This document shows, in pieces, positions 4,774 to 39,615 of a stretch of 64,000 bases of DNA. The notes under the pieces are model-generated. The model did not search any database. It saw only the letters and a list, made by a program, of their open reading frames with translations, and was not told where the DNA came from. The stretch lies in assembly GCF_023055435.1 (NCBI RefSeq), contig NW_025963868.1:11656001-11720000 (forward strand). Direction: 5' to 3'. This stretch comes from Haliotis rufescens. Its lineage: Eukaryota. The position numbers were made by a program, and so were the translations under genes. The number at the start of each line of letters is the position of its first letter. Positions within the stretch are counted from its first letter, which is position 1.

Positions 4774-5664
4774 AGTCAGTGAGTTAATATAATCAGCTCA
4801 TTAATAAGCCAACAGTTACAACATGACTGATGTGGACAAATCAGTTACAAAATGTTCTTAAATGGGAAAATGACATGGTGTATAATTCAACTGTTTGAAT
4901 ACAACTGCAGTGGACACAATCAAGATGATATGTAGACGAGAAAAGAACACGATGTGTAGATTGAAACAGAACGTGACATATAATTGCTTATTGCGTGTAA
5001 GTTCTCTGAAAGGCATTTAGACGTTGGAGTACAAAGTAAGGATAACATATATGGATGAACAACTTCTTTATTACAATTAGGAGCGACGTTTCGGTGTAGG
5101 TTCTAACAACGTTATCAATTAAGCAAGTGATAGTGTACAGTCGGAAACAAAAGATAGTGTGTAGACCGGAACAAGATCTTTATCGACTGGAACAGGACAT
5201 ATAATATAGACCGGAACACCGAGTGAGGTGTATATGTGTACGGTAGTATTCGAAATAAAAGTACAATGACAATAAAGAGATTACTTTCCTTCCGCCATTT
5301 GCCTTCGCTACCATACTGACCTACACCAGAGTACATGCCTACACCATTACACCACTACATGTCTGTGATGTAATCGATAAATCAGTTAGACAAACTTCCT
5401 ACATCACGTGAAATGGTCGAATCACAGACTAGCTGACGCATTGATAGAAAGCACTTGTTGTACACACATTGCTACGCGGAAGCTGTCAAAATAACGTGTT
5501 CCGATGAATGCTATCGCAGTAACTGAATAAGGTCACATGTACATTATCGCTATCTACAAATGTGTATACAAATATACAATGAATTGTGTCTCGGTACTTC
5601 AAGTAGAACTGATTTGGGAAATCAAAGGCAGTTAATTCGTGCTGTTTAATGCACATTCAGTATT

Positions 5665-5943
5665 GGGGGGCACGGGTGGCCCAGTCGTCAAAGGCGCCGC
5701 GATTCGCTGTGCAGAATTGTGGCCCTTGGGCACGCCAGAAACCTATGATTGTGGGTTCGAATCCCGGTTCGAACCGATTATGTTTCTAGGTTTGTCAGCA
5801 ATACCCGTGCTCGTGGGTTTCACCGAAGTGGTAAACGTCTGAGACCTGCATTACTTCGGGCTTTCCTTCTACGTTAAGCTGACACGCCGTGATATAACTG
5901 GAATACTGTTAATAGCGGCCTTAAACCCAACTCACTCACTCAC
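5665..5943 (+). mobile_element. tRNA-derived SINE family 2 (other copies: 44131-44410 +, 61496-61773 +, 55635-55916 -, partial 41302-41500 - and 40978-41070 -)
   Basis: GGGGGCACGGGTGGCCCAGTCG (A box-like) ... GGGTTCGAATCCC (B box), (ACTC)n tail, multiple near-identical dispersed copies; flanked here by a cacattcagtatt direct repeat. Confidence 0.85.
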
Positions 5944-6435: not shown

Positions 6436-8149
6436 TCCACACCAAGATACATACATACCATCTAGTGATGGCGTAAATGCAGCTCACTCACTCTCTCAAG
6501 AACATCCAGGGGGTGATGTAAGTGTCCATGATACCCATCTGGGTCGTCTTAATGGTGCTGGGGATGTTTTACTGACAGGTTATAAAACAACACGATTCTT
6601 ATCGTCGCCAGCTTAGACCTCATGTGACGTACATGCATACATTTACTGATTCACCGATTGTGTCATTCCTAATGTCCAGGGTAGATCAGAGCCCAACACC
6701 ACAATAAGGGACACCTGTTATGCAGTGCGTTACCTGGTTGAGTGGATCATGGATCATGTTATTAACAACTGATCTGTCGGACTAATATTTGAACGTTGGC
6801 ATTATTGCCTTCTGTATCATGAAACAATCGGTCACATATTGTTTAGTTTGTCTTCTCAGTCACGTTAGCCCGACTATGCTTAATGGATATGCAGTTGATA
6901 CAATCAATACGGTAACAGGAGAGAATCCGTTCGCAAAGAGACAATTGTTTAGGTACATTATATTTTTTTGAATATCCGTTTGTCTCTATGGAACCCTGGG
7001 GCAGCAATGTTATTCATATACATACACGTGATGCAAGTGTTATTCGTTGACACGTAGAACCCAGGAGACGTATAAGTTGAACGATGGACATTTTACATCA
7101 TATACCAAATCATGTCTGTCCGTTTGTTGTTTAACACCACACTCAGCAATATTCCAGCTATATGACGGCGGTCTGTAAATACAAGCCCCACATGTGCAAG
7201 TATTACTGAAAAGTGTTCCCCTATGGTTGCTATGATAGAACAAAAGTATTCCCCTTGCATCCAAGTCCGCCCGTATCACGGAGGAGAATTCAGTATAAAT
7301 TTACTCTTAGAGAAATGGAATTAAAAAATACCAGATACATTAGCTTTTGATTGATGAAGGAAACTGGCAAAAGAGAAGTAAAAGCTTTATTTTGAATAAA
7401 GAAACAGTTACATAAAGTTACATTCAATAGCCCTTACGAAGCTAGAAATAACAGATCAAACACTCATGTCCATTTACCTTCCATGAATTATGTGGCTATC
7501 ATATCGTTATTTGGCTAGTGTAGCTCTATCAGGCGATCATAGCTTTATTTTGCTTGGGCAGTTTCAATAGTTTGTTATAACGAACTTATTGTAGCCTGCG
7601 TCGCATACATATCAAACATATCGGCAGGTTACCCGAGGCTGCTTTGTGAGAACTGCCACTGTCAAGATCCGACAGTAAAACTTAAATTAACAAGTATCAA
7701 TACCACCAAACTTTACGCGCGACTATCTGAACATAGTTTCTGCAAAATTTCATTGCATGTAATTATTTCTTGGCAAACCAAATATATGTTATAATTATAC
7801 GGCAAGTGTACTGTGGCAGGTCAGTTGCATTCTGCTCTTAATAATTTGTGAACACGCCTACTATCAAACTCTGAATAGCGACCCGTTCCATTCTATCCAC
7901 AATAACGGGTAGGTATTCATCGTTATCTAAATAAAAGCGACAAAACTTTTCCATGGTCATAAAAAAACAAAAAAACTTGATTCCTACTCTATCTAAACCA
8001 GGAAATAAAAGTTCCCTTAGAGTGGTTGGTGACTGCACAGCCACGTTGTATGCGGCTCGGTGTAGGGCATGGTGTGTAGTGACTGGTTTTACAGTATTTT
8101 AGCAGCCTTCAAGGGACATTCACGAGAGTGTATTCGATGTGCCGGTAAC

Positions 8150-11100
8150 ATGGGATTTCTCACATACCTGACTACTCTGTTGTGGATAGGACGGATTGTT
8201 GACACACGTAGGTTTCCCTTTGTCATTATACAAAGTATTGAATTATCTATGTACATATATATATTGTGCAATGGTGTATAAAGTGTAAATAGCAATCACA
8301 GTATTTAAAAGTACTCCCTCACCACGTTTCTTTGTGTACGCTGATGGAATTCCAACATGACTGGTGTTGAAGAAAGACAAAGTACGAAAATCTCTACCTG
8401 TTTGCCTGATTTATTCTAATGTATGTTGGAATGTTGCAGGTGGTTTCCCTCTAGAACTCACTCAGTTCCAGTCAGGCGATGATGTCACCTTAGTCTGCAC
8501 CGCAACTAACACCACTATCAAGATTGAGTTTACACAATGGTACATGGATGACGTACGAGTTCTCATGTCAGTGTCTGCAGGGAATGTATGTCTAAAACAC
8601 CCACCTACCAGCACAGGCGATACTTATGCATATCGTTACGACCTATACATATCAACGGATGTCAGTGTAAGCTGTGGTTACCTCCAACACAACATGACAC
8701 TAACTACAACTCAATACCTCCATGCTGGGACTGTGTGGCGGTGTGAGGATCAACGCAAGAGAGTCAGTAACAACCTTACTTCAGGTATGATCTATCTGTT
8801 TCATTTCGTGCGCATATATTCTTTTATTTACATTTACATGTCCTTGTAATCTCACGCATCATGTTGTGACACACTGTACATGTATCAATGCAGATATACC
8901 TCAGTCGGTATGCATGATCAATAACTATATTTACAACACGGACACCCAAAGATACATTAATACTTTTAGAAGTGATGTGAAATGGGATTTAACGTCCCTT
9001 GCATGTTTATTGNNNNNNNNNNNNNNNNNNNNNNNNNNNNNNNNNNNNNNNNNNNNNNNNNNNNNNNNNNNNNNNNNNNNNNNNNNNNNNNNNNNNNNNN
9101 NNNNNNNNNNNNNNNNNNNNNNNNNNNNNNNNNNNNNNNNNNNNNNNNNNNNNNNNNTTGCAAATATACTAGCCCAGACTAATGCAGGTTTCATAGTGCT
9201 AGCCCACAAAGATATCATGCACTACTTTAACATGATTACCCCACTCAGACACATTACGCTCGGAAGCGACAAGTCCTTGTTGTATTCCCTTGACTCAGTG
9301 CACCGGGCAGGGCAACAACAAGTACCATCTTTTCACATTTTTTAGAATTACACGGCCGGAGATCGAACATCCAACCATTAGACCACATTGTTATTGTGTG
9401 TTAGATATTGAGCCAGTAAATGTCATAATTAACTTATATTATTTGTGTCTGCAGACATTCTAGGGACTGCGTATGAGTCAACTCCACCACTGACTGCATC
9501 AGCAACAACGATCGCCACAGACAGAGCTATTCATGGTAGTTGTGCACCAACTAACTAAACTAACGTTTGCATACAGTGTATATCATATTTAGAGAGACTT
9601 TGTATTAACACCAGTTATCATATTTAAACTTATGCCGACATAAGTCATGTACTTGTATACTTATTAAGCTAAAGGTTTGGCAGTACAATGTATATTAGTT
9701 TTAGGAAAAGTCTGGAACATATATAATACAACTATGATTACCCATAGGGTTAGAAAAGACCGAGTTCATGAAAAATGCATGTGTACTAGTGCAAAAGACA
9801 TTGTTTCCGTCCTTCTGATGGCATTGTTGAAGTCATTTAATCCTTTTGATGCTGAAGGTCGGAATAGCGTCACACTGGAAAAGACGCCATAGATGAAGTT
9901 TGTTCAGGCCACTCGACATTTGTGGTTTTCTGAAACTGCGATCCTGCTCAGTGCAGTTTTCTAAACGGGAGATCAAAAGAATTAGGAAGTAATACATCAG
10001 TATGACAACTTTTACAGACACATGATCTAGGACATAATATCAATATGCATTGAGCCTCGTTTATTTGAGTGAGTGAGTGAGTGACTATTGTTTTACGTCG
10101 CTTTTAGCAATGTTGCAGCAATATCACGGTTGGGGACACCAGAAATGGGTTTCACACATTTTATCCAAGTGAGAAATCGAACCCTGTTCTTTGGCGTGAC
10201 GAGCGACCGCTTTAACCACTAAGCTACCCCACCGGCCCAGCATTTATTCAAAGAAACATCATGGTGATATATTTTAGTATGTTATGGCTCTTGATATTGC
10301 AGAATTTATAACAGGTCAACCCTGCTGTATGGAAGTATGTAATATTACACTATACAAGACCTACACAAATATATCACTGCTAAATAATAAATCATGGAAC
10401 AGACACCCATTACTAACGAGTAAGGTGTAAAGCCCATTAGTTTCGCTGCTTATCAATGTGTTTGTTAATATTATATTATTCAATACTTATACTAACAACC
10501 TCTATGCACAGTACAACTCATACATTTGCCAGAGACGGTATATCAGCCCAGTATTTGTTTTCTTATTTTTCTTTTTCAAGTTGTTAATAACGCCATAATC
10601 ATCATTGTTATGGCGGGAGGTGGCGTCGTGATCCTCATCATAAGTGTTCTCTGTGTATGTTTTTTGAGGAGGAGGCGAAAAGAAATTGGAAAAGCTACAC
10701 AAGGTGAACTCATTCTAAAATTGACTCAATATGATTTTTTTATATTTATTTATAGTTACTTCGATTGGCAGTTCCTATTGTTGTCCTTTGCTCGATAATA
10801 ATTTTCTCATGTTTTAATTATAGTGCGTGAGTGAGTTGGGTACAATGCAGCTTTGCACAGTATTCCAGTTGTATTAATGCGAGGCGGTATTCGTAGGTTT
10901 TTTTGCGTCCCATGAGAAGCAACATTGTACAACGAATTGCGGCGCCCTAGATGACAGGACCGCACGTCGAGTTTTACCAAAAAGAAATACCTTTTGTTTC
11001 CAATTCATAAGCCGATATTGCATACAGCCGGAGCTGACTGTAACGCCATTTATACGATCAGTGCTGATTGGATGTGAATTTATTGTTTTATAATCGAGCA

Positions 11101-11503
11101 ACAACGTAGTATTTTGTTCCGCTGCTAACAGTAGTTTCTATTGAGTATATCTAACATATATCTCAATACAAACGAAAAAAAACCGATTGATGTCTTGTGG
11201 CCTTGTATCACAGATCAAATGTATTGATGCAGCTTGCACCCGTGTGTGTAATGTAAAATATGCCTTATGTCACCAATGCTTGATTCTTAAGTTCTAAATT
11301 GTATTTGTGTTTGTGCAGATGTATCACTGGCTGATGTTGACACACCTCAGTACGACACTTTGGCTCACAATGGCAATACAGATCCCTGTTACTCAGAGAT
11401 CAAGAAAGAAACTTCCAGACAGTCCAACATACACACAAACGATGTTTACTACAACACCGTATCCAAAAATGCTGACTACGAAAACCCACCCATGAGAACA
11501 TAG
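8150..11503 (+). CDS. Gene A: single-Ig-domain type I receptor with ITAM-like tail (~263 aa)
   Basis: Exons 8150-8207 (leader MGFLTYLTTLLWIGRIVDT), 8440-8784 (Ig: TLVC..WYMD..VWRC), 9455-9535 (stalk), 10581-10703 (TM), 11319-11503 (tail ...PQYDTLAHNGNTDPCYSEI...VYYNTV..DYENP..*). All introns are GT-AG and phase 1; the total of 792 nt is an open frame. The N gap 9013-9157 lies in intron 2. Confidence 0.85.
9013..9157. other. Assembly gap (N run); second gap at 27173-27328
   Basis: N characters in the sequence. Confidence 1.
10066..10238 (-). mobile_element. tRNA-derived SINE family 1 (gene A intron)
   Basis: Full-length copy: (gagt)n ... gggacaccagaaatggg ... aatcgaaccc ... ctaccccaccg. Confidence 0.85.
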
Positions 11504-13399
11504 TAGTGTCAATCCACAGTGTTTAGACAAGCAAGTTCGTTTGTGGCATTTTCTGCCAGTATATTTGACTACAGGCATAATGACATCACGTCGTTTGTTT
11601 TTTGGGCATGGACACCATTATTTTCGAAAGAAATCTCTTCAATATCGTCGCTAAGCAAAAGTATTTGTGGGTATAACAACAAACAAATGCTTACTTTTTT
11701 TACAGTGTGAGTGACAGGTACTGCTGGTAAAGGCTGGACTTGTATACCTTTTCGCGAACACCCGGAGTTGTCGCTGAATTTCAGTTATCCATCCATACCT
11801 GTGTCATCAGTACTTTTGGGTTTGCACCAAAGGACTTTGTTTCGGCAGATGATCGAGACTGATTATTTGGTGTTGACGTTTTAAAATTTCTCAAAAAACA
11901 TTCTCCTCTCCATTAGTGTCTGCATAGAGCATACACATGTCCTATGCATTTTAACTGGGATTTACTATCACTTGCATTGTATATTACGTGTAAGTATCAC
12001 CTCTAACATATTTGTAAGTTCTCCCTTTGAAATCCTTTGTTACACAAACGTTACCCACGTTATATGTTATGTACATGTGAATGCCTCTTATCAGGAGTGA
12101 ATGACTGAATATCCTGAAAGAGCATTATTTAATAAACGTATCAAGTCTCTGCAATAGGCTTGTGTGCACTGGTTTGGAATTGTTGGAGTTTCTATTCAAT
12201 TCCTAATGTTCTCTTTCGTTGATAATAAAGGCTTACAAAGTTCACAGCTTAATGTCTTTGTTTGCAATTAACTCGTTATTAGAACATTTACTATCAAACA
12301 TTGCAATATAATATAACTAGATAACCATTTTCACCACCACATTATATATACTTACGATCTGGAAAAACACACGGTCAAGTTTTAATTATTCTTTGTTTAT
12401 GTATGGAGTTTAACATCGCTTTCAAGATTACATCCCGGATTTAGCTGACGTGTGTGGCTGTTAGTTCTTGTCAGAACATATGTTGCAGTTATAGTGCCAG
12501 AGCAACCGAGATATCGTGCCACTGTTTTCGGTAACTATACGCCGAGCAGGATCACAACAAGTACACTGTTAGAGCCCAACCCTGACTATAAATAGCCCGC
12601 AAGGTGGCGGTTTTAGTTTCGAACAATGACTGACAAGGTGAACACAACCGAGTGTCGAGATAAGCTTTTTGTAAACCAAACGGTAACAAAATCACCATTG
12701 ACCGTCAAACTTGAATGGCAAACATTGGGTACGACAAATGGCTCCATATCTATATACAAGTCAATACATTTTCTATAGTTTTATCATTAAAAAATCGAAT
12801 CGGTCGTGTTTGGCGTCTGCATCAAGTACAGTGGGCGGAGCTTATCAAGGGTTGTGGTTTAAATAGCAAAGCACATGGTCACATTCGATGCATTTGTGGT
12901 CAAAGTGTCTTATTGTTGTATATATATTTACGGCAGAACAGCAGTTTCTGTTAATGTAACAATAACGATACATAACTACGAAATTCACGTTAGTTACATA
13001 AGTATTAGCGACAAGATTCTTTCAGTTCAGTCCGTTAATTACAGTTACATGTTATAGACAGATCTATACCACACTATAATCATATTATATCTATGAAACT
13101 TAAACTATTACACATATTCTTCAACTAGTTTTAGGAAGAGGCCTAATTTGAAGCACCTGAAGCGGCGCCAATATTTCTCCGCTCGACTACAGTATATGAA
13201 TATGTCACGTGTATCAACATAATGCACATAAGCAACTGATAAATAAGTAACGAAATATACTTGATACTTTGACCTACATTAGGCCTGTCTAGATAACATT
13301 CTACTGACGATAAACCAAAACTCTAATGCATATATTCTAAGACAACTTTAACGATGGATTTCCTTTTCTTTCACAACATTTTCACACACAAAACTTAGT

Positions 13400-16346: not shown

Positions 16347-19300
16347 ATGGACATCGGGATTCGCCTGATTACTCTGCTGTGCATAGGATGGATTGCGTAC
16401 ACACATAACAGTAGGTTTGAATATTAAATAATGCGAAAGGTTGAACCATTTGGATTTCATTGATGTAATTTAATAGTGATTGTAGCAGTTTATATCCGTT
16501 ATATTTCGTATTTGCATGTTACAGCTGGGTCGGCATTGTAAGTACACGAAGAACGACAAAGAATGTCACTGCATGTTTGTGTTCTGATTGCTTCTCATGC
16601 TGGTTGTATGTTGGAATGTTGCAGGTGGTTTCCCTCTGGAACTCACTCAGTTCAAGTCAGGCGATGATGTCACTTTAGTCTGCACCGATGCTAACACAAC
16701 TTTCAACATAGAGTTTACAAAATGGTACATGGATGACGTACGAGTTCTCACGTCAGTGTTTGCAGGGAATGTCTGTCAAAAACACCCACCCAACAGCCCA
16801 GGCGATACTCATGCATATCGTTACGACCTATACACTTCAACGGATGTCAGTGTAAGCTGTGGTAACACCCAACACAACATGACACTAACGACAACTCACT
16901 ACCTCCACGATGGGACTGTGTGGCGGTGTGAGGATCAACGCAATAGAGTCAGTAACAACCTTACTTCAGGTATGATCTTTTTTTGGCCATGAGCTCACAT
17001 TCCTTTACTTACATCTACGTGTTCTTTTGATCTCACACATCGTGTCAGATAGACGCTCCAACCATCTGACCACAGAGGCGATAAAATAAAATTTATTCTT
17101 CTAGAGCGTCGATATTGAGCTGGTAAATGCCACAATTAATTTATATTATTTATGTATGCAGATATTCAAGGTACTCTAGGTAGTTTTGTATATTACATTT
17201 AGAGAAACAATGAGACCTGTTATGCCATTCACATTAATGCTGGTAAAATCATCTTAACAATCGTAGGTCAGATACAATATCAGATAGTTTTAATAATCCT
17301 CTGTATATTATAGTTTGTACTTTTATATGTAAAATGTTCGAACGTCGTTTCACAATCACACTGAGCATAACTGATGTTGGCTCATCTAAAAGATTTTTCA
17401 AACAATAGTATTGTGTAATTCTATGTCCTCTATGATGGGCTAGCAAATTTCATAATTATTTGTTTTTATTATTTGTGTCGGCAGGCTTTGCAGTGACTAC
17501 CAATAACACAAGATCACAACTGACTGATTCAGCAACAACGTTGGCAAAACTTACAACTATCAAGATAACTACTCCCCTGAGCAACGAAAATCAAGGTAGT
17601 TATGTATTAGTCGTCAAAATTACCTTTGGCTACGATGTGTACGATATTTAGAAACAGTCAGGAATGTATAACACAACCGTATACGGACCCATGATCCAAG
17701 ACATACCCCCTTTTTGCATTGAACGGCATGTATTTGAACAGACGGTATTGTGATAAATTTCGGTGTATCAAAGCTCTTGATATTGCGGTTTTACACGATA
17801 TTTCATGGCTGCAGTTTACTCGAATAGGATACTGTCTTAGCTTAGTTACTGTGAATGAATGAACGATTATGAACAACAAAGTAAAATATAATGTTCTCAC
17901 CTCCAGACAAATAGCATGGAAAAAAACATTGATCATAAACCCATTACTGACGACGTGCTGTTTCACGCCTTCGAGTACTCGGGACAAATTGGATTCACTT
18001 GATTCTAGTGTTATTCGGCCATCATCACAATCAACGGATACGGACATACAGACAACTCCAGAATCTAGTAGTTACATGTAATCTCCGTCTCTGCATACCA
18101 TGCTTAAAACCTAGGTTTTGTACAGTATTGAAACAGAACAGGTAGCTCTAATCTGTAATATACATACATAAAAAATCACAGTCCCTTTTCGAAAAGAAAA
18201 CTTCCCAAATCAACCTAAGTCATTTGTGGTGAAACATTATCAAGTTAAAAACTTCAGGTCATAAATCCTTAACAACCCCAGCATATAGATTGATGTCATC
18301 AAATCCATCTGCGTGTATACAGCATGGTCTCTCCTCTCGCTATTATTGTCTCAGATCATTCAATACTTACACTCATTGCTTATGTACACGGACTCATACC
18401 TGAACCTACATAGACTTATACATGGACCAATTTAACGGCCAGTATATAAGCCCAGTATTTGTTTTCTCCTCAAGATAACACCATATGCATTATATTTTTT
18501 AAAGATCAACATCAACTTCATTGACATCACTAACCATGGCCCAGACACCCAGTATATGTTTTATGTTCAAGATGACACCATGTACATTGCTGCTGGGGCA
18601 GGAGGTGGCATCATGATCCTCATCATAATCGTTATCTGTGTATGTGTTGTTAGAAGGAGAAGAACGGTAAACGTCACGCAAGGTAAACTGCACTTCTGCA
18701 GTCGGAACATATTACTATTATTTGGTATCAGATTCCGATTTGATGTAAAGTGATTTGAAGATCAAACCAGAACATTCAGGACAACGTTAAGCATTTCAGA
18801 TGTAAATATTAAAGTTTCATCAAATATAAAAGCTACAGCTCTCATCTGTCAATTCATTTACTTATCCATCCTTATCATAAAATCGCTTATTTGAGCATAC
18901 ATCAACACATATCGCAAGAGTATTAACAACAGAAATATAATAAATTATGCAGTGAACAATGGTATTGGTCGTCATGTCTGTTCACAGCTATCAGCGATGC
19001 AGACAATGGTGCAGAGCTTTCAGAAAACCCAACTTATGTTAGGTGAGTAGAGTGTCAAGTGCTTCCACTGTATGTCACCTTTGAATTCCGTCACGCAACG
19101 CCCGTATGGGTCGTCTTCAGTATAGAGTTATGTTATTTCAATGTGGTCAACTGTATGTCTTTTCTAGCCTTTGCATTGGATTGTGACGGATACGATCTAA
19201 ACCTTGTGTCATTTTTATTGAGTAAGATTCATAAACACATGCTTTAGATATAGTCAGAACGGAAAATGGACTCTGCTTTCGGCACAGATTTCTTACAATT

Positions 19301-21198
19301 ATGGAAATGGTTTTGTTAGTTTTATTTGCATCTCACAAAACGTACTGTTTACAATGTTAATACTCTTTATATTCAGGAACCATTCACTGTGTAATACAAA
19401 CACCTAACCATGTAATATTGGTTTAACGATTTCCTTTATCATAGGAAAACTTTAATCACAAACGATTTAGTCCAGAAAAGTTTGCGTTATATTCACAATG
19501 AAACACGAAACATTATGGAATACTAGACATGTACTAAACTTTAGTTTGTTGTGAGCTTTCCTGAAGGTTATATTGGCCTACACAATATTGTGTGTGATTC
19601 TGTTCTCTCCAAGCTGTGACAGTGAAACAGCGCCTCAGCTTATGTGTGAACGAGTATCTCTGATTGGAGCTTTTACACAAGTCAATGGGATCAATAGTAT
19701 CATCTCAAATGTGATAAACAAACATTATTCATGAAACTTTTGTATGCCACTTTGCTATGATCACATTTACGTGTAGGTTTCTATGTAGTTATGGTTATTA
19801 TTATTTGCAATAATTTATTCCAGTGTTGAAACGATCAATAATTTAAAACAAAAATCCTTTTCAGAAATCAAGATGAAGCAGCTGACAACAAAGAGCTCTT
19901 AACTAGTAAGTCTTCACAGTTGTGGTGTTCTTCACTTCCTCACATATCTGACTACTGTATTTGAGTGGTGATTATAGTTAGAGTGTTGCCTTCTCGATGA
20001 AGCTGAATAATTTCGGGAAGAATTTAGGGTGATTATTATGTTGTTAGTTGTTGGAATATAAACACCATCATTCCATTTCTAACTGCCGCACCAGGCACGA
20101 CAACCGTACACCAGCCTGCTGTAGTTGGTGCTGTCAACGTTGACGATGTGTATCCTGTACCAGACAAAACACCCAAGCACCAGTCGGCTGTACGTAGTGC
20201 TGTCAACGTTGTCGATCTGTATGCTGTACCAGACAAAACACCCAAGCACCAGTCGGCTGTACGTAGTGCTGTCAACGTTGTCGATCTGTATGCTGTACCA
20301 GACAAAACACCCAAGCACCAGTCGGCTGCACGTGGTGTTGTCAACGATGGTGACATGTATGCCGTCCCGGACAAGAGACCCACACACCAGCCAGCTGTTG
20401 GCGGTGCTGTCAACGTTGATGATCTGTATGCCGTACCGGATATGTCAATGAAAACAAAGAACGGAACATGTAAGTATACACGGAAGTGTGACCGGACTAG
20501 GAGTTATAATGAGTCTCCTTATATGTTTGTCGTAAGAGGCTCTGAAAGGGTTGGATGATTTGGCTCGGTTGATTATTCGACTAACGGCATCGGGTGCTCA
20601 GAATCGGTGGCATGGTTCATGCATTGCATCGTATCCCAATTTCGTAGATCGATGCTTATGATGTCAGTCACTGGGTTGACTGGTCCAACTGGTCCCGGTG
20701 ATTTACAGACATCCGTCACAAAGGTGGAACATTACTGGATGCGCGGTTAATCAACAAACAAACAAAAAAAACTTGGTAGTTAATGTGTCATCGTAGCCGA
20801 ACGACGTGGAACGTTTTTCATAACATTAACCGTTGGTTTGCCTGGTCCAGACTCGACTTTTAAAGGACGATTACTGACTGTGGCGCAAAACAACGTACAT
20901 ACAAAATGTCACATCCTTTTAGGGATTTATGACTGACTGACTGAGTGAGTATGGTTCTAAACCGCTTTTAGCAATATTCCATCAATATCACGGCGGGGGA
21001 CACCATAAATGGGCTTCACACATTGTACCCATGTCGGAAATCGAACCTGGGTCTTCGGCGTGACGAGCGAACGCTTTAACCACTGGGATACCGCCCCCTA
21101 GGGATTTATGACAGCAAGACAATGTTGATGTTTGGACTGAATATATATTGTTGGTTGTTGCAGATAATTCTCGGTCCGAAGCCGACAGTGAAATCTAA
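16347..21198 (+). CDS. Gene B: single-Ig-domain type I receptor with NPxY and 5x YxVP-repeat tail (~384 aa)
   Basis: Exons 16347-16410 (leader MDIGIRLITLLCIGWIAYTHN), 16625-16969 (Ig), 17162-17179 and 17485-17595 (stalk), 18572-18682 (TM), 18988-19042 (ENPTYV), 19865-19905, 20095-20469 (69-bp repeats), 21164-21198 (YNSRSEADSEI*). Splice phases are compatible; 1155 nt open frame. Confidence 0.82.
20095..20445 (+). repeat. Coding 69-bp (23-aa) tandem repeat, 5 units (paralogues 38525-38805 with 4 units and 53588-53800 with 3 units)
   Basis: Unit KTPKHQSAVGGAVNVxDLYAVPD. Exon lengths of 375/306/237 nt differ by exact multiples of 69. Confidence 0.92.
20934..21098 (-). mobile_element. SINE family 1 with 14-bp TSD (last intron of gene B)
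   Basis: TSD tagggatttatgac at 20920-20933 and 21099-21112; empty site in paralogues D (~39290) and E (~54285). Confidence 0.9.
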
Positions 21199-26271: not shown

Positions 26272-29200
26272 ATGGACACCTGGATTCATCTGATTACACT
26301 ACTGTGTATAGGATGGATTGTTTACACAAATAACAGTAGGTTTCAATTTCTAATCATGAAGGATAGAACCAATGGGATGTCGTAGGTGTAATTTAATAGT
26401 GATTGTACAACTTTATATCCGATCTGTGTCGTGTGTGCATGTTACAGTTATTTGGGTATTGTAAGTACATGAAGAACGACGAAGAATGTCACTTCATGTT
26501 TGTGTTCTGATTGCTTCTCATGCTGGTTGTATTTTGGAATGTTACAGGTGGTCTCCCTCTAGAACTCACTCAGTTCCAGTCAGGAGGTAATATCACCTTA
26601 GTCTGCAGTTCCATCAACACCACTATCAGCACGTCCTTCAGATATTGGTATATGGATGAGGTGCGAGTTCTCACGTCAGTGTTTGTAGGTCATGATCATG
26701 GTTGTAACAGAAACCCACCCAATAATGATACTGCATATCGTTACGACCTATTCACATCAAATGATGGTAGTGTAAGCTGTGGTGGCAACCAGCACAACAT
26801 GACACTAACTACAACTCAATACATCCAAGCTGGGGCAGTGTGGCGGTGTGATGATCAACGCCATAGAGTCAGTAACAACCTTACGTTGGGTATGATCTTT
26901 TTGTTATGCGCTCATACTCCTTTGTTTACATCAACGTGTCCTTTCTGATCTCATACATCATGCTATGACACATTGTACAAGAACGGATGCAGATGTAACT
27001 GATTCATGAAATATATACCTGGGAACCGTACGTAAATGTTCAAGGACTATGAACACGCCATCTACAAATTAAGAACTTTATAAATCGGTCACCAACAGAT
27101 ACATACGGAATTAGCACTATCGGAGAGTGAGGTGAAATTTGTGACGTCGCGTCCATCATTTCTCCACTTATANNNNNNNNNNNNNNNNNNNNNNNNNNNN
27201 NNNNNNNNNNNNNNNNNNNNNNNNNNNNNNNNNNNNNNNNNNNNNNNNNNNNNNNNNNNNNNNNNNNNNNNNNNNNNNNNNNNNNNNNNNNNNNNNNNNN
27301 NNNNNNNNNNNNNNNNNNNNNNNNNNNNTCAGGACACATGCCTGTTTCAAAGTGATAACTCAGATAGCATGGCGCAGTTTAAATGCATTCCCCATTCAGA
27401 AACAGTAGACTAACTCCGAACAGACAAAACCGTGTATTTCCCCAAGGAGAATACTATGCCTTGTCGTATGACCTGGCCTGGTGTCAAAGCCACTGATCTT
27501 CCCTTCTCAGGATAAACGCTCTAACCGGTTGATCATGGAGGCGGTCAATATAAAATCGCTTGTTCATGTGTATCGATATTAAGCTAGTAAATGTCACAAC
27601 TAATATATATTATTTATGTATGCAGTCATTCCTGGGACTACTGATAAATCAACTACACCACTGACTGATTCAGCAACAACGATCACCACAGACAGCGATA
27701 CTCATGGTAGATTTGTATCAGTTAAACTAACGATGTATTATATATTTAGGGATACATTGTATTGATACCAGTGATGTCATTCACACTAATGCCAGCGAAA
27801 GCCATTTTATCTGTTTTAATAATCCTCTGTATGTCATTAACCTAATATATGTTTCAGCTATCCACAAATTGAGTAACTTTGTATGTAAAATGTTCGAACG
27901 CCCGTTCCTAAACACACTAAAATGAACATAATGTGGCTCGTCTAACGGAATATTCAAACTATAGAAGTGTGTTATTTTATGTCCTCTGTGGTGAGCGAGC
28001 AAATTTCATAATTATCTGTATATATTATTTATGTCGTCAGGCTTTCATGGGACTACTTATAAGAGAAGTTCACAGCTGACAACGTTGGCAAATCTTACAA
28101 CTATCAAGTTAACTTCTGCCCCGAGCAACGATAATCAAGGTAGTTGTGTACTAGTCGTCATACTAACCTTTGTGTACGATATATATGATATTTAGAAACA
28201 TTCATGAATATATAACAATACCTATACTGACCTAGGGCATAGCAAGACATAGCAACAATGTGCACTGAATGTACATTTAAAACAAACAGTACTGTGATAG
28301 CTCTCTAGACATTGCGGTTTTTACATGATATTGTGATACATCAACCCCATTATTTCGGTGCGGCATTTTATTAAACTTCTCATATTGACTTAGCTTTGTC
28401 ATTGTAAACGAATGAAGTATTATAAATAACAGAGTAAGCGATATTGTCGTCAGGCCACGATAAGTGGCACGGAAAAAAACATGGACCATACACCCATTAC
28501 TAACGACGTGCGTATTAACGTCATCGGGTAACCGAAGAAAAGTTGGATCAGCTGAATTCTAATATTAGTTGGCCATGATGGAAATTAAAGGTTACTGATA
28601 TTCAGAAACTTAAGAATGTAGTACTCATATATAATCTCAATCTCTGCTAAGTATGCCTAAAACCTAGTTTTGTACAGTTCTGCGTAAAAGGTTACTCGTA
28701 TCTATCAGGTTACGCGTTACATAACTTCATGTTCGTTATTCAGTTATGGCTTGATGAGACTCATACGTGGTACGAGTTGAAAGCACTAGCCAATTAAAAC
28801 AGTGTTTAATCTTACTCCACTTATTCTAATTTTACTATATTGTGCCTGAGACAAGAACTTTACTGTGCTTTATATGTATCCCATTTCCCTTTCAAAACCG
28901 TCCCAATCAAACTAAATTATATGGTGAAACATTATCAAGTAAATACTAGTAACTTCGTATCATTGCTCCTCATAGACCGAAGTCACCAATTCTATCTGCG
29001 TGTATACAGCATGGACTCTCTTTATGTAAAAGTTATGTTGTCTTAGATTATTCAGTACTTATACTCATTGCTTATATATATACGAACTCATAGATGTACT
29101 TATATAAACTTTTCCATGTGCCAAGTTCAAGGACAGTATACTTACTATCCCAGTATTTGTTTTCTCTTCAAGATGATGCCATGTATATCGCTGCGGGGAC

Positions 29201-31043
29201 AGGTGGAGGAATCTTCATCCTCATTATAATCGTTATCTGTGTATGTGTTGTAAGGACGAGAAGAAAGGGAAACGTCACACAAGGTAAACTACACCTCTTT
29301 GATGACGGTCAGAACAAATTAGAATTATTTGGTATCGGATTCTAATTTGATGTTAAGTGATTTGAAGATGAAACCAGAACATTCATGACAGCGTTATAAA
29401 GCATTCATGCTATATTTCTAGATAATCCGTTTTTCACATTAAAGTTTTCAAAGATCATGGACCAGACGCCCAGTGGCCCAGTATAAGTTTTATGTTCAAG
29501 ATGACACCATGTACATCGCTGCTGGGGCAAGGGTTGGCATCATGATCCTCATCGTAATCGTATCTGTGTAGGTGTTGTGAGGAGACTAAATGTAAACGTC
29601 AAACAAGGTAATCTACACCACTTGTAAGGAGGGTAGCAATATTTTACAATTATATGTATTCAGAAACTGATTTAATATCATGTGATTTGTAGGTCGTACT
29701 TGTACCTTTTGCCGTTACTGATTTAAAAAACGGATTTTAATACATGTGTCATAATATTGTCAATATAAAGTGATTCCACATCTCACCTACATGTCTACCA
29801 TAAATCTTTTTGAAAGCATTATTAGTGCCTTAAATGCTGTGACCCTGATCAATCAGCTTCGAAGCAAGAGCAGTGTGACGATCTTTGAAATCTTGGTAGA
29901 AAGAGCAATATACCTCAAAAGTTGTGAAATGAAGACACCAAGGGCTCTTGCTGATGGAATACTGCTCCACACAAAGTGAACGTTGAGCACTGCAAAGTTG
30001 AAGTCATCCCTATTTTGGGCATTTGCTTCCATGTTTGACAAATTGACCTGAACCTCTGATGATAGATAAGTAACGCTATCTATGGTCACCATCTTTATAA
30101 ACAAGCCTCATGGAACAAGGCATGAAGTTTTCCTTCACGTTTCCCAAATGGTATTGTGGTGTACAAAGTTGAAAAATCAAATGTTTTGACAGAATTGAAG
30201 TTGGTTCTTTTCAGAGTTTGTAAAAAAGTCAAGCAAATCATATATTTTTTTGAGAATCCACATGGTAATAATTCCATTTGTCTCAAATATTTTTTGTTAA
30301 AATATAAAGTTCTTTCTTGATTGTATGAATGATTATGGTTAATCGTAGAGACAGGGATTTTGTGGTACATTTGCTGAACCCAGCAATATATCTCTCTTTG
30401 TACGGATTGTTATAGAGCTTTGGAATCCAGTACAAAAGAGGAATGGATATGTCTTCAGGTTTTACAGTCAAGTCAAAAGTTGATGGTACTGATTCATTGA
30501 TTCAGCAGATTTCATCATCAATTAACATACTGCCCTCACATGTGGCGTTATTTGATATCATTATGTCATTTATACCAAATTCTTTAATCAAACAATTAAT
30601 GTAGTGATGCTTACGCAAAATGGTTATGTTATTTGAGGCCTTGTCAGTGAGAACAATCTAAAACTTTTCAAGAAGGGCAGCCAAACATTGGATGACAGCT
30701 GGTTATGACAGATCATCTCAATACAAATAATAAACAATATTAATGCTGAGGAGCTTTGTATCACAAATAAACTGTTGTGAAGCATCGTGTGTCAGTGTGT
30801 AACGTAAAACATGACTCGTGTCTACAACACTCCTTATTTGTATCTGTGTTTTGTACAGATGTATCACTGGCTGGGGTTGACGCACCTCAATACGACACTT
30901 TGGCTCACAATGGCAATACAGATCCCTGTTACTCCGAGATCAAGAAGGAAGCCTCCAGACACTCCAGCATAAATGCAAACTGTGTTTACTACAACACTGT
31001 GCCCGAGAATGCTGACTACGAAAATCCACAAATGATAACTTAG
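26272..31043 (+). CDS. Gene C: single-Ig-domain type I receptor with D-type ectodomain/TM and A-type ITAM-like tail (~293 aa)
   Basis: Exons 26272-26335 (leader), 26548-26889 (Ig), 27626-27706 and 28041-28139 (stalk), 29173-29283 (TM), 30859-31043 (DVSLAGVDAPQYDTLAHNGNTDPCYSEI...YYNTV..DYENPQMIT*). 882 nt open frame. The N gap 27173-27328 lies in intron 2. Confidence 0.82.
29501..29607 (+). pseudogene. Frameshifted second TM exon (B-type) inside a gene C intron
   Basis: ttatgttcaag|ATGACACCATGTACATCGCTGCTGGGGCAAGGGTTGGCATCATGATCCTC... matches the B TM exon (18572-18682). It is 107 nt with a frameshift and in-frame TAG; the donor caag|gtaatc is retained. Confidence 0.8.
29850..30690 (-). mobile_element. 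Penelope-like retroelement RT remnant in a gene C intron
   Basis: LYWIPKLYNNPYKERYIAG..KCTTKSLS; VKTFDFSTLYTTIP; RDDFNF...SSIPSARALGVFISQLLRY. These resemble Penelope-like RT motifs and are frameshifted. Confidence 0.75.
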
Positions 31044-33190
31044 AAGTGTGAAAACCACTGTTTTAAGTTGTCAGACCAGCAAATATATATACATCCTCCA
31101 GTGTTTGTGGCATTTTCGGCCAATATGTTAAGCTATTATCATAATGACATTACGCCATTGGTATAATAAAAACATTTTGTCACTACTGATGTATCGTCGT
31201 ATAGCAGGATTATTCCTGGGTGTTGCAAAAACAAACACCATGTTTTATGAAAATTGTGCATAGGAGTTACCGCTGTAAAAGGCAAGACATGCTTAACCTG
31301 TTTCGTAACACCTGGTGTCACAACTGATTTTCAGTGATGCATTCATGCGGTTGTCATCATTATTTTGCCTTTCGGCAGTTATTCGACACTAGTTCCATGG
31401 TGTTGACGTTTTAAATTGTATCATAACCTATTTTCATCTAAACATCTGAACAGTTGTTAGGACCTGTATATAGCATACATATGTGATTATTTTAGCTGGG
31501 GTTTACTAGCATCTGTAATGTATATTTCGTGTTTGTGTCACTTCAAAAGTATCTGTACCTTATCCCTTTGGAATCATTAGTTACGCAAACGGTATCCACG
31601 TAATATGTTGTGTAAATATCATGTTCACTGAATCTCTAACAGGAAAGCGTGAATGACTGAAAGTCAATAGTTGAATGTCCTGAATTCACATTATCTATTA
31701 CATTGTGTGACGTACTGGTTCGGCTTTATTTGAGTATCTATTCAATGTTTATTGTCCTCTTCCTGTAGAAATAAAGGCTTGATAGGCTGACAGATTACTG
31801 GCTATGTTTTCAATTAATTCGAGTCTCATGCATGTTCCATCAAGCATTGCAGTATAATACAACTAGATTACTACTTTCACCACAACATGATATATACTAC
31901 GACCTGGAAAAAAACACACATGAAAGTTATATTCAAATTGTGTTTATATAACTCCTACCCACCAGAATGTGTAAGCGAGTATCGACAATTGGACAGTTTT
32001 TTGGTAAGATGCATTTTTGATTACAACACAAGGTACACGGACCTGGAAACTGGGGACATTGATATTGTATGACTATTCTAGATAAGGAAATATGCATATA
32101 TAACTGTGGTTAATAAATTTTAATAAAAAGAAAAGTATTGAATGTTTTTAAATTTAATAATACATCTTACAGTGCATATGCATGGAGACATCCTTGACTT
32201 GAAGGTCGTGATTCACAGTTTGGACGTGCATGTTTAATCCGTGGCAGACAATTTGGATGCTTGCATGCTAGCATGGAATATGATTATCACACACGTGGTT
32301 ATTTCAATGTGAACATCCCAAATGATTGTTTATCTTTCAGGTGCTCAGAAAAAAACACTCTATTCTTATAACAACGCTTATGCAAAGCCTCGGCAAAATG
32401 AAAATTAACATCTACGTGGCCTGGATATGCTGCAAAGAGGAACAGCTTAAAACGAACATTATCTCTTTGAAGAGGTTATCTAGCAGGGCAACACTCATGA
32501 CCTGTCACGGACCAGTCGTACACGTGTGACGTCACGCCGCACAACATCCGGCGTCAAACCATACGCACACTTTTTCACAGCATAAACAAAGACTATAAAA
32601 GGATATGGTATAATTTTCAATTATTTTCCGCAATATTTCTTTCCACAACAGGGTCAAACACTAGGATTAAATTATAAACCTTTCGAAAAGCAGGGATGTG
32701 TGTTAACTTATTGAACATACACGTGACCATCTATTTGTGAATGAGAGCTCGCCCATACGGATCTCAGCGATTTGTATTCATGAATCGGCAGTGTCTAGTA
32801 TGTTCTCATTAACATCACACGAAGAATGGAAACCCCCCACCAACAAAGTGATTACATGATCCAAATACGCCAGGATAGACAATGAAACATTATCCCTTTG
32901 GTATATGTACCGACAACTGCACGCAACCACAAACTGGCAGTAATGCAAGTTGTACATTGTGAAAATATCTAAAGGTATGTATCTATCAATACCTAAACCC
33001 GGAAAAACATCTGCAGGTGAGCGAATGCTGATTGTAGGAATATTTCCTCCTTCATAAGGATGTATTTCACAGATAGCGGAGCTCTAATGTTTGTTCACGA
33101 AGAATGTTGCACGTTGCTCTGTGTGTATTTCACGTGTAGTAACTTATTTCAACCGAATATTGACGAGAGGAAGTTTGATTTAGGAGAAAC

Positions 33191-34182
33191 ATGGACACAA
33201 GGATTCGCCTGATTACTCTGCTGTGTATAGGATGGTTTACGTACACAAATAACAGTAGGTTTGAATTTCTAATCATGCTGTGTATAGGATGGTTTTCGTA
33301 CACAAATAACAGTAGGTTTGAATTTCTAATCACCCGAAGGATGGAAGCATCAGGATGTCGTAGGTGTAATTTAATAGTGATTGTACCACTTTATATCCTA
33401 TCTGTTTCGTGTTTGCATGTTACAGTTATTTGGGTATTGTAAGTACATAAAGAACGACAAAGAATGCCATTGCATGTTTGTGTTCTGATTGCTTCTCATG
33501 CTGGTTGTATCTTGGAATGTTGTAGGTGGTCTCCCTCTAGAACTCACTCAGTTCCAGTCAGGAGGTAATATCACCTTAGTCTGCAGTTCCATCAACACCA
33601 CTATCAACACGTCCTTCAGATATTGGTATATGGATGAGGTGCGAGTTCTCACGTCAGTGTTTGTAGGTCATGATCATGGTTGTAACAGAAACTCACCCAA
33701 TAATGATACTGCATATCGTTACGACCTATTCACATCAAATGATGGTAGTGTAAGCTGTGGTGACAACCAGCACAACATGACACTAACTACAACTCAATAC
33801 ATCCAAGCTGAGACTGTGTGGCGGTGTGAGGATCAACGCAATAGAGTCAGTAACAACCTTACGTTGGGTATGATCTTTTTGTTATGCGCTCATACTCCTT
33901 TGTTTACATCAACGTGTCCTTTCTGATCCCATACATCATGCTATGACACATTGTGCAAGAACGGATGCAGATGTAACTGATTCATGAAATATATACCTGG
34001 GAACCATACGTAAATGTTCAAGGACTATGAACACGCCATCTACAAATTAAGAACTCTATAAATCGGTCACCCAAAGATACATACGGTATTAGCACTATCG
34101 GAGAGTAAGGTGAAATTGTTACGTCGCGTCCATCATTACTCCACTTATATAGCGACGTCCATGTACGTTTGTGTGAGTGTGT

Positions 34183-34233
<51 letters not shown>

Positions 34234-39412: not shown

Positions 39413-39615
39413 ATAGAGGAAGAGACGTCAGCTAATTCGGTCCTGTCAATGTTCTAGGCGACACAACGCTTACGTTTGTTCGACAAACAAATTCAAATGG
39501 GACCCTGCTCCTCTGGGTGTTCTCCTTGTTGTGTACAGCTCTCGCTACTGTGTCTAGGTCTGCGTTGAACTTAAACATTATTTCAATGTAAATAGGGTAA
39601 GTTGATATAAATGTA

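What the first reader, a model, noticed from the sequence alone, without database searches (positions are those of the whole stretch)
11319..11503. ITAM-like cytoplasmic exon in genes A and C
Seen: D-x-P-Q-YDTL-AHNGNTDPC-YSEI is identical in A (11319-11503) and C (30859-31043) while flanking residues drift; it is followed by YYNT and YENP. Known: an ITAM is YxxL/I-x(6-12)-YxxL/I with upstream acidic residues and binds Syk/Shark tandem SH2 domains; YxN binds Grb2 SH2. The TM has no charged residue, so the receptor would carry its own ITAM (as FcgRIIA and CEACAM3 do) rather than use a DAP12/FcRg-type adaptor. Inference: an activating or phagocytic receptor.
Basis: partly seen in the sequence, partly recalled or inferred. 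Interest (0 to 1): 0.78.

Follow-up and report, generated by a model that had tools for sequence, protein, structure and literature searches.

The report
Abalone receptor tail with ITAM-like motif
This is the last coding exon of an uncharacterised abalone cell-surface receptor gene; it encodes a cytoplasmic tail with a conserved pair of tyrosine motifs spaced like the activation motifs of vertebrate immune receptors, so it may be an immune or phagocytic receptor.

Summary
Window 11319-11503 (gene A) and 30859-31043 (gene C) are terminal coding exons that encode YDTL-x9-YSEI, then YYNT and YENP.

- **Splicing:** one transcript-like contig joins A's uncharged transmembrane exon directly to this exon through a GT..AG intron. 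The public model of gene C, an uncharacterised Haliotis rufescens protein, makes the same join.
- **Ectodomain:** a single domain that Pfam misses, but whose predicted structure matches V-set immunoglobulin domains.
- **Conservation:** the two tyrosines, their 9-residue spacer and YYNT are kept in all 17 related tails examined, from three paralogue clusters and four Haliotis species. Between A and C the core has only silent changes, while the linker drifts.
- **Partners:** the genome has Syk-like SH2 and kinase exons, and also SHP-2, PLC-gamma and p85.

Caveats:
- The spacer is 9 residues, not the canonical 6-8.
- One clade has YSTM as the first motif.
- The public model of gene A stops before the transmembrane exon.
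- Nothing functional was tested.

A self-signalling ITAM receptor is already known in oyster (CgIgR), so I class this as a new member of a known kind. The scan also noted an ITAM-spaced tyrosine pair on another piece of this genome (s1-818268).

The parts
8150..8207 (+). Gene A leader (signal peptide) exon, phase 1 donor GTAGGT
   Evidence: homologous to the leaders of B-E and to the first 22 residues of P0002. The public model P0016 uses the same leader-to-Ig junction.
8440..8784 (+). Gene A ectodomain exon: single V-set Ig-like domain (phase 1-1)
   Evidence: Pfam gives only a weak Ig_3 match, E 0.068. The AlphaFold2 model has pLDDT 85.8. Its Foldseek matches are antibody and TCR V domains. 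A contig begins exactly at 8440 (X1 record 1).
9455..9535 (+). Gene A Ser/Thr-rich stalk exon
   Evidence: tblastn of P0002; also present in P0016.
10581..10703 (+). Gene A transmembrane exon with the RRRRKEIGKATQ stop-transfer stretch; no charged residue in the membrane span
   Evidence: The donor GT is at 10704-10705.
11319..11503 (+). Gene A terminal coding exon (the finding): 61 codons of cytoplasmic tail plus stop TAG
11351..11401 (+). ITAM-like core YDTL-x9-YSEI of gene A
11444..11461 (+). VYYNTV: invariant YYNT. It reads as pYxN (Grb2-type) on the first Tyr and fits the ITIM consensus on the second.
11477..11488 (+). YENP (pYxN, Grb2-type site)
26272..26335 (+). Gene C leader exon
26548..26889 (+). 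Gene C V-set Ig-like exon. Limits are approximate, taken from homology with A and the tblastn range.
29170..29282 (+). Gene C transmembrane exon
30859..31043 (+). Gene C terminal coding exon with the same ITAM-like tail (core at 30891-30941)
   Evidence: It is identical to residues 233-293 of P0002.

Best explanation
Window 11319-11503 is the last coding exon of gene A. Gene A belongs to a tandem family of abalone (Haliotis) type I membrane proteins built as signal peptide, one V-set Ig-like domain, a Ser/Thr-rich stalk, an uncharged transmembrane helix and a tail of about 74 residues.

The tail is a tyrosine-phosphorylation signalling module carried by the receptor itself. It has a bi-tyrosine ITAM-like unit (YxTL-x9-Yxx[I/L]) followed by YYNT and YENP.

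Inferred mechanism:
1. Ligand binding clusters the receptor.
2. A Src-family kinase phosphorylates the tyrosines.
3. The doubly phosphorylated unit docks the tandem SH2 domains of the Syk-family kinase encoded in this genome.
4. The pYxN sites dock a Grb2-type adaptor.
5. The cell, most likely a haemocyte, is activated, for example to phagocytose.

Shown here: the gene structure, the transmembrane-to-tail splice, the V-set fold prediction, the conservation and selection on the motifs, and the presence of Syk-like exons.

Inferred only: phosphorylation, the binding partners, the cell type and the outcome.
For: - **Peptide and exon limits:**
- **Splice:** contig X2 record 13 (239 nt, 0 mismatches) covers 10556-10703 and then 11319-11409 across a GT..AG gap. 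The public H. rufescens protein P0002 (XP_048254008.1) equals gene C and joins its transmembrane exon to the tail exon.
- **Ectodomain:** AlphaFold2 pLDDT 85.8, pTM 0.81. Foldseek found 270 PDB matches at E<=0.001, and the top ones are antibody and TCR V domains.
- **Selection:** core pN 0 against pS 0.26; linker pN 0.27 against pS 0.29.
- **Conservation:**
  - Both tyrosines, the spacing and YYNT are invariant in 8 tails from three genomic clusters.
  - The x9 module is present in 17 of 17 tails.
  - Of 60 columns, 24 are invariant in 7 A-type tails from H. rufescens, H. cracherodii and H. rubra. These include Y11, T13, L14, Y24 and I27, while the +1 positions vary.
  - Indels occur in the linker but not in the spacer.
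- **Same architecture in distant paralogues:** C157 Ig exons lie 3-4.6 kb upstream of C157 tails, with transmembrane exons about 0.4 kb upstream.
- **Kinase:** the N-SH2-like exon at C112:26903584-26903724 has SYK as best PDB hit, 55 bits. The kinase exon at C112:27080619-27080753 scores 77 bits to ZAP-70 and 70.6 to SYK, against 58 for the next family.
- **Precedent:** oyster CgIgR carries YTEL-x8-YEKL and is reported to bind CgSyk (PMC6994640, passages read).
Against: - The spacer of 9 is outside the classical 6-8 (0 of 17 tails).
- Only 8 of 17 tails have L/I at both +3 positions. All 9 C157-type tails have YSTM first, which reads as a p85-type YxxM site.
- VYYNTV fits the ITIM consensus in 8 of 17 tails, and an SHP-2 orthologue is present.
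- The canonical acidic residue at -3 of the first tyrosine is missing (D is at -4).
- The splice rests on one low-depth contig (3.3) from a run whose RNA nature is only a guess.
  - Contigs of similar depth lie on the introns and cross the acceptor unspliced.
  - That contig starts 25 nt upstream of the predicted transmembrane-exon acceptor.
- The public model of gene A (P0016) ends by read-through after the stalk exon, with no transmembrane or tail exon.
- The H. cracherodii orthologue model (P0014) joins the stalk to the tail without a transmembrane exon.
- The C-terminal SH2 of the Syk-like gene was not located. Its SH2 and kinase exons lie about 170 kb apart, so they may not belong to one gene.
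- Pairwise similarity of A-type to C157 and C268 tails is weak (E 0.09-3.3).
- No expression by tissue and no biochemistry.
Confidence: 0.5

Rival explanations
1. A tail of independent docking sites. Each phosphotyrosine recruits a single-SH2 partner: Grb2-type at YYNT and YENP, and p85 PI3K at YxxM or YxxL. The tandem SH2 domains of Syk do not engage the pair. This would work like DAP10, CD28 or a LAT-type scaffold rather than an ITAM.
For: - YYNT and ADYENP are the most strictly conserved blocks: fully invariant in 7 of 7 A-type tails, and YYNT in 17 of 17 tails.
- The C157 clade has YSTM (9 of 9), which matches the p85 motif.
- p85-like tandem SH2 exons are present at C112:48.52 Mb (identified by eye).
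- The spacing of 9 is non-canonical.
Against: - The exact 9-residue spacing never varies in 17 tails, although the neighbouring linker has indels of 7-11 residues.
- Both +3 positions stay hydrophobic.
- Syk-like exons exist.
Confidence: 0.18
2. An inhibitory or dual receptor. The second tyrosine of VYYNTV acts as an ITIM and recruits SHP-2. The receptor then dampens signalling, or switches between activation and inhibition as some vertebrate FCRL proteins do (that comparison is recalled, not tested).
For: - VYYNT[VLM] fits [ILVS]xYxx[ILV] in 8 of 17 tails and is repeated 2-8 times in the C268 paralogues.
- An SHP-2 orthologue is present: 123 bits to PTPN11.
- The ITIM definition is as quoted in the Hydractinia preprint.
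Against: - The flanking V residues are not kept in the 9 C157-type tails (AYYNTA), while YYNT itself is invariant. Selection therefore acts on YYNT, and the invariant Asn at +2 of the first Tyr suits Grb2.
- The two core tyrosines do not fit the ITIM consensus (P at -2).
Confidence: 0.17
3. The YxxPhi motifs are sorting signals. YDTL, YSEI and YSTM would bind the AP-2 mu subunit and drive endocytosis or lysosomal targeting of the receptor, without phosphotyrosine signalling.
For: All core motifs fit YxxPhi, including YSTM. Such signals are common in type I membrane proteins (general knowledge).
Against: Sorting signals do not require a fixed distance between two tyrosines. YYNT and YENP are not YxxPhi, yet they are the best conserved blocks. 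The conserved Thr at +2 and the conserved spacer residues (NT-D) are not explained.
Confidence: 0.1
4. A chance motif in a drifting or non-functional gene copy.
For: The public model of gene A is truncated before the transmembrane exon. The annotation of the locus is fragmentary (P0013, P0019). Evidence for expression is thin.
Against: - Shuffles give the motif in 0.6% of cases.
- The core has pN 0 against pS 0.26.
- The module is conserved in 17 of 17 tails, three clusters and four species.
- All five exons of gene A are open, with consistent phase 1 junctions.
Confidence: 0.03

Closest known systems
Crassostrea gigas CgIgR (PMC6994640; passages read)
   Same: A mollusc type I IgSF receptor that carries its own ITAM in the tail (YTEL-x8-YEKL). 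It is reported to dimerise, bind CgSyk and promote ERK signalling and haemocyte phagocytosis.
   Different: - CgIgR has five Ig domains; this family has one V-set-like domain plus a stalk.
- The spacer is 8 there and 9 here.
- No YYNT or YENP sites are described for CgIgR in the passages I read.
- No sequence relative outside Haliotis was found for this family.
- Figure S2 of that paper is a supplement and was not seen.
Vertebrate receptors with a built-in ITAM-like tail: Fc-gamma-RIIA and CEACAM3 (recalled, no call)
   Same: Single-pass IgSF receptors with no charged transmembrane residue and a non-canonical ITAM in their own tail. They drive phagocytosis through Syk.
   Different: They are unrelated in sequence. 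The spacers differ: 12 in Fc-gamma-RIIA as I recall, against 9 here. This family adds two pYxN sites and an ITIM-like context.
Drosophila Draper with the Shark kinase (recalled; mentioned through reference 23 in the passages)
   Same: An invertebrate phagocytic receptor whose long-spaced ITAM recruits a Syk-family kinase. The sister tails here (D-type) also carry an NPxY, as Draper does.
   Different: Draper has an EGF-repeat ectodomain, not Ig. Its ITAM and NPxY sit in one tail, whereas here they sit in alternative tails of sister genes.
Hydractinia Alr family (bioRxiv 10.1101/2022.03.04.482883; passages read)
   Same: A clustered, lineage-restricted invertebrate gene family. Its V-set domains have sequences that profile searches barely recognise, and some members have ITAM or ITIM tails. 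Syk and SHP homologues are present in that genome.
   Different: Alr is cnidarian, and its proteins have several domains including an Fn3-like fold. Its tails are too diverse to align. Here the tail module is conserved across clusters.
Vertebrate paired-receptor families: KIR, LILR, SIRP, fish NITR (recalled, no call)
   Same: Tandem arrays in which near-identical ectodomains are coupled to different signalling tails. Gene C and gene D are 93-95% identical from 26302 to 29405 and then differ in the tail.
   Different: In vertebrates the activating partner usually uses a charged transmembrane residue and an adaptor. Here both tail types are built in, and the alternative tail (NPxY plus a YxxP array) is not a classical ITIM tail.

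Membership tests
ITAM (Reth motif) | Two YxxL/I motifs in one cytoplasmic stretch | tested here: met
   YDTL and YSEI in A, C and F and in 4 orthologues from other species. Not met in the 9 C157-type tails, where the first motif is YSTM.
ITAM (Reth motif) | Spacer of 6-8 residues between the motifs (classical definition) | tested here: not met
   The spacer is 9 in 17 of 17 tails, and none fits 6-8. It does fit the looser x6-9 and x6-12 definitions used for invertebrates.
ITAM (Reth motif) | Acidic residue at -3 (D/E-x-x-Y) of the first tyrosine | tested here: not met
   In A the sequence is D-T-P-Q-Y, so D is at -4. The second tyrosine does have D at -3 (T-D-P-C-Y).
ITAM (Reth motif) | Lies in the cytoplasmic tail of a membrane protein | tested here: met
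   The transmembrane exon is joined to the tail exon in one contig and in the public model of gene C. The RRRRK stop-transfer stretch follows the membrane span.
ITAM (Reth motif) | Both tyrosines are phosphorylated and are bound by the tandem SH2 domains of Syk, ZAP-70 or Shark | not testable with these tools
   Only the presence of Syk-like N-SH2 and kinase exons in the genome was shown. The C-terminal SH2 was not found.
Immunoglobulin superfamily, V-set | Match to a curated Ig profile above threshold | tested here: not met
   Pfam Ig_3 scores 14.1 bits, E 0.068, against a cut-off of 30 bits.
Immunoglobulin superfamily, V-set | Ig beta-sandwich with the B-strand Cys, C-strand Trp and F-strand D-x-G-x-[YW]-x-C | tested here: met
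   C19, W33, G96, W99 and C101 are invariant or nearly so in 23 paralogues. The model has pLDDT 85.8. Foldseek probability is 1.00 to antibody, VHH and TCR V domains, with TM 0.45-0.61.
ITIM | [ILVS]-x-Y-x-x-[ILV] in the cytoplasmic tail | tested here: inconclusive
   VYYNT[VLM] fits in 8 of 17 tails (A-type and C268-type). AYYNTA in the C157-type does not fit. The core tyrosines do not fit.

The most novel reading that the evidence does not exclude
Abalones carry a genus-restricted, tandemly expanding family of single-V-domain surface receptors. All of its exons are phase 1, so a nearly identical ectodomain and transmembrane body can be re-coupled to alternative signalling tails. One tail type is ITAM-like with pYxN sites; the other has an NPxY plus a YxxP array.

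This would be an invertebrate paired-receptor system that arose independently of KIR, LILR and NITR. The ITAM-like exon would be a mobile module shared by at least three gene clusters.
Probability: 0.3. Interest if true: 0.75.

Novelty: new member of a known kind. Interest (0 to 1): 0.5.

Why it matters
Outside Drosophila Draper and oyster CgIgR, ITAM signalling in invertebrates is known mostly from motif spotting. This is an uncharacterised abalone gene family; every public record seen is named 'uncharacterized protein' or 'mucin-22-like'.

In this family the ITAM-like unit is demonstrably under selection, is shared by three gene clusters and four species, and sits next to sister genes with the same ectodomain but other tails.

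That gives concrete candidates for haemocyte activating receptors in a farmed and endangered group. It also gives a natural experiment on how receptor tails are exchanged. The claim can be tested directly with peptides and chimeric receptors.

Tried and rejected
- **Pfam on the exons.** The tail, stalk and B-type tail exons gave nothing, and the transmembrane exon gave only sub-threshold noise.
- **A conserved RNA or DNA element.** Rejected, because the conservation pattern is codon-wise.
- **Hunt for the Syk partner.**
  - The strongest tandem SH2 loci turned out to be Csk, SHP-2, two PLC-gamma genes (by eye), p85 (by eye) and a JAK.
  - The Pfam kinase scan scored only 143 of 882 candidates, so it cannot show absence.
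  - Syk-like exons were found only through a short recalled kinase motif and then PDB comparisons.
  - In some searches the top row, 9p9u_A, is titled EGFR but matched in two stretches. I ignored it as probably an engineered construct; this is unverified.
- **Literature.** Four searches found no paper on an ITAM receptor in Haliotis. The one apparent hit, PMC8557453, matched the author name 'Itami'. Supplements were closed, so Figure S2 of PMC6994640 and SI Figures S6-S7 of the Hydractinia work were not seen.
- **C268 paralogues.** Their ectodomain is unknown: no transmembrane exon lies within 1.5 kb upstream, and I fetched no more.

Full report
**What is there**

The window is eukaryotic DNA of about 38% G+C from a 1.33-Gb assembly. 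Public proteins identical to its products are from Haliotis rufescens, the red abalone.

Read from 11321, the stretch 11319-11503 encodes VSLADVDTPQYDTLAHNGNTDPCYSEIKKETSRQSNIHTNDVYYNTVSKNADYENPPMRT and then a stop. The copy at 30859-31043 has an identical PQYDTL...YSEIKKE core and 12 differences elsewhere.

**Gene structure**

Five plus-strand paralogues lie in the window: A 8150-11503, B about 16347-20555, C 26272-31043, D about 33191-39440 and E about 47898-54430. There is also an Ig-exon fragment near 25015.

Gene A has five exons:

| Exon | Coordinates |
|---|---|
| Leader | 8150-8207 |
| Ectodomain | 8440-8784 |
| Ser/Thr-rich stalk | 9455-9535 |
| Transmembrane | 10581-10703 |
| Tail | 11319-11503 |

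- All junctions are phase 1. The codon across the last junction is G+AT = Asp.
- The membrane span (25 residues) has no charged residue and is followed by RRRRK.
- Gene A lacks the second stalk exon that B-E have.
- I searched gene A exon by exon and did not join its exons.

**Is the tail exon spliced to the transmembrane exon?**

Four runs of the same species (their kind 'RNA?' is only a guess, and they are kept as contigs) were laid on 8200-12400.

- One contig (X2 record 13, 239 nt, depth 3.3, no mismatches) covers 10556-10703 and continues at 11319-11409. It skips 615 bases bounded by GT..AG.
- Another contig begins exactly at the predicted Ig-exon acceptor, 8440.
- Against this:
  - Contigs of the same low depth lie on introns (10733-11015 and 10992-11244), and one crosses the tail acceptor unspliced (11264-11651).
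  - The joining contig starts 25 nt before the predicted transmembrane acceptor.
  - No contig links the stalk to the transmembrane exon.
- The other listed joints sit in a SINE-like repeat at 10058-10238, where depths are in the tens of thousands. I take them to be repeat artefacts.
- Independent support comes from the public model of gene C, P0002 (XP_048254008.1, 293 aa). It runs leader, Ig, two stalk exons, transmembrane and tail, and maps at 100% identity to 30858-31040.
- Independent doubt comes from two other models:
  - The public model of gene A, P0016, ends by read-through after the stalk exon.
  - The H. cracherodii orthologue P0014 joins the stalk directly to the tail.

**Ectodomain**

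- Pfam sees only a sub-threshold Ig_3 match (14 bits, E 0.068).
- An alignment of 23 paralogous exons keeps the Cys, Trp and D-x-G-x-W-x-C pattern.
- The AlphaFold2 model (pLDDT 85.8, pTM 0.81) matches antibody, nanobody and TCR variable domains. Foldseek gave 270 matches at E<=0.001, with probability 1.00 and TM 0.45-0.61 for the top rows.
- The domain is therefore V-set Ig-like by fold, not by profile.

**Family and distribution**

- The Ig exon has 33 matches in the genome (86 candidates). They fall mainly in two clusters, C90:11.64-11.73 Mb (which contains this window) and C157:7.12-7.24 Mb.
- The tail exon has 9 matches (14 candidates):
  - A, C and a third copy F, 6.5 kb beyond the window's end.
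  - Four on C157 (E 0.09-0.98).
  - Two on C268 (E 1-3.3).
- These pairwise scores are weak, but the context agrees. C157 tails lie 3-4.6 kb downstream of C157 Ig exons and about 0.4 kb downstream of a transmembrane exon.
- A profile of 8 tails searched against 1.84 billion representative proteins found 7 hits. One (P0007) is low-complexity noise. The other six are all Haliotis: rufescens, rubra and asinina.
- P0002 searched against 5.8 billion proteins found 11 hits, all Haliotis.
- At this sensitivity the family is restricted to the genus.

**Conservation of the motif**

| Comparison | Result |
|---|---|
| 8 tails from three clusters | Invariant: Y11, T13, T20, Y24, S32, Y43, Y44, N45, T46, N55, P56. 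The linker has indels; the spacer has none. |
| 18 sequences, of which 17 carry this tail type | Y-x-x-[LIM]-x9-Y-x-x-[LI] in 17 of 17 |
| Same 17 | L/I at both +3 positions in 8 of 17 |
| Same 17 | Classical spacing of 6-8 in 0 of 17 |
| Same 17 | YYNT in 17 of 17; YENP in 14 of 17 |
| D-type control, P0008 | No such module |
| 7 A-type tails from three species | 24 of 60 columns invariant. These include both tyrosines, T/L at +2/+3, I at +3, all of VYYNTV and all of ADYENP. The +1 positions vary. |
| A versus C, core | 3 silent, 0 replacement changes |
| A versus C, linker | 2 silent, 7 replacement changes |
| 200,000 shuffles of the tail | ITAM pattern appears in 0.6% |

The 17 tails are not all independent: P0002 is gene C, P0009 shares P0006's tail, and P0010 is close to L005. 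Even so, the motif is real and selected.

VYYNTV fits the ITIM consensus [ILVS]xYxx[ILV] (definition as quoted) in the A-type and C268-type tails. In C268 it is repeated 2-8 times. In the C157 clade the flanks are Ala, so the constraint seems to be on YYNT itself. That suits a Grb2-type pYxN site, a property I recall rather than tested. In the same clade the first core motif is YSTM, a p85-type YxxM (also recalled).

**Partners in the genome**

| Partner | Place | Evidence |
|---|---|---|
| Csk | C1 | |
| SHP-2 | C212 | 123 bits to PTPN11, |
| Two PLC-gamma genes | C79 | by eye, |
| p85 | C112:48.52 Mb | by eye, |
| JAK | C605 | |
| Syk-like N-SH2 exon | C112:26903584-26903724 | SYK 55 bits, ZAP-70 45, next family 38 |
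| Syk/ZAP-70-like kinase exon | C112:27080619-27080753 | ZAP-70 77 bits, SYK 70.6, next family 58 |

The two Syk-like exons lie on the same strand about 170 kb apart. The second SH2 was not located, and I did not show that they form one gene.

**Mechanism**

The best-supported reading is a self-signalling receptor. Clustering leads to tyrosine phosphorylation, the bi-tyrosine unit recruits the Syk-family kinase, and the pYxN sites recruit an adaptor, which activates the cell. This is inference from motif logic and from the oyster precedent: CgIgR carries YTEL-x8-YEKL, binds CgSyk and promotes phagocytosis (PMC6994640, passages read). Long-spaced ITAMs that still work (Fc-gamma-RIIA, Draper) are recalled, not tested. 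The rival readings are independent docking sites, an ITIM or dual function, and endocytic YxxPhi signals. They are scored in the Rival explanations section.

**Comparison and novelty**

ITAM-bearing IgSF receptors are known in oyster and proposed in Hydractinia, so the kind is known. What is new:

- This family itself: it is unnamed in the databases, and four literature searches found nothing on it.
- Its single V domain.
- The fixed 9-residue spacer combined with YYNT and YENP.
- The arrangement in which gene C shares 93-95% identity with gene D up to 123 bp past the transmembrane exon, and then carries an A-type tail at 85% identity to A. That looks like tail swapping between sister genes.

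I class it as a new member of a known kind, with interest 0.5.

Noticed in passing
window 20095-20469, 38485-38853, 53548-53847: Genes B, D and E end in a different tail. It has an array of 23-residue repeats, each with LYAVPDKTPKH (a YxxP motif, Crk/Nck-type as I recall). In the public proteins P0008 and P0019 this array is preceded by ENPLYVTY, an NPxY motif.
   Followed up: partly
window about 39398-39440 and 54392-54434: D and E have a terminal mini-exon encoding ...STWSEADNEYSEI/V and a stop. It ends in the same YSEI as the second half of the A-type ITAM-like core. In H. cracherodii P0008 it reads YSTW-x6-YSEI, which looks like a degenerate relative of the module.
   Followed up: partly
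window 26302-29405 versus 33278-36334, then 30838-31065 versus 11299-11525: Gene C is 93-95% identical to gene D through the transmembrane exon and 123 bp beyond, then switches to an A-type tail (85% to A). All exons are phase 1, which would allow such swaps.
   Followed up: partly
window 8150-9560 (gene A); public proteins P0016, P0013, P0019, P0014: The public annotation of this cluster is fragmentary. The gene A and gene D models stop by read-through after the first stalk exon. The 3' half of D is a separate model without a transmembrane exon. The H. cracherodii A orthologue model skips the transmembrane exon. These may be soluble isoforms or mis-annotation.
   Followed up: no
window 10058-10238: A (GAGT)n run is followed by a tRNA-like SINE. 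It is covered by contigs at depths of 20,000-65,000 in all four runs and is the source of several spurious joints. Similar elements recur through the window, for example at 5613-5839, 44063-44293, 55749-55922 and 61458-61661.
   Followed up: no
L008 and L009 (G000:C268:1545995-1546129 and 1554532-1554666): Two paralogous tails carry YITL-x9-YTQL followed by 2 and 8 copies of a GGGGHSDIS-G-VYYNTVPT repeat. This is a copy-number-variable array of the YYNT site. Their ectodomains were not identified.
   Followed up: partly
G000:C112:40.06-40.25 Mb: A tandem cluster of at least six genes, each with an SH2 C-terminal half followed by tyrosine-kinase exons. It looks like an expanded cytoplasmic tyrosine-kinase family and was not identified further.
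   Followed up: no
L053 (G000:C112:27060001-27070000), about 6885-7430: A Tc1/mariner-type transposase open frame lies in the region between the Syk-like SH2 exon and kinase exons.
   Followed up: no
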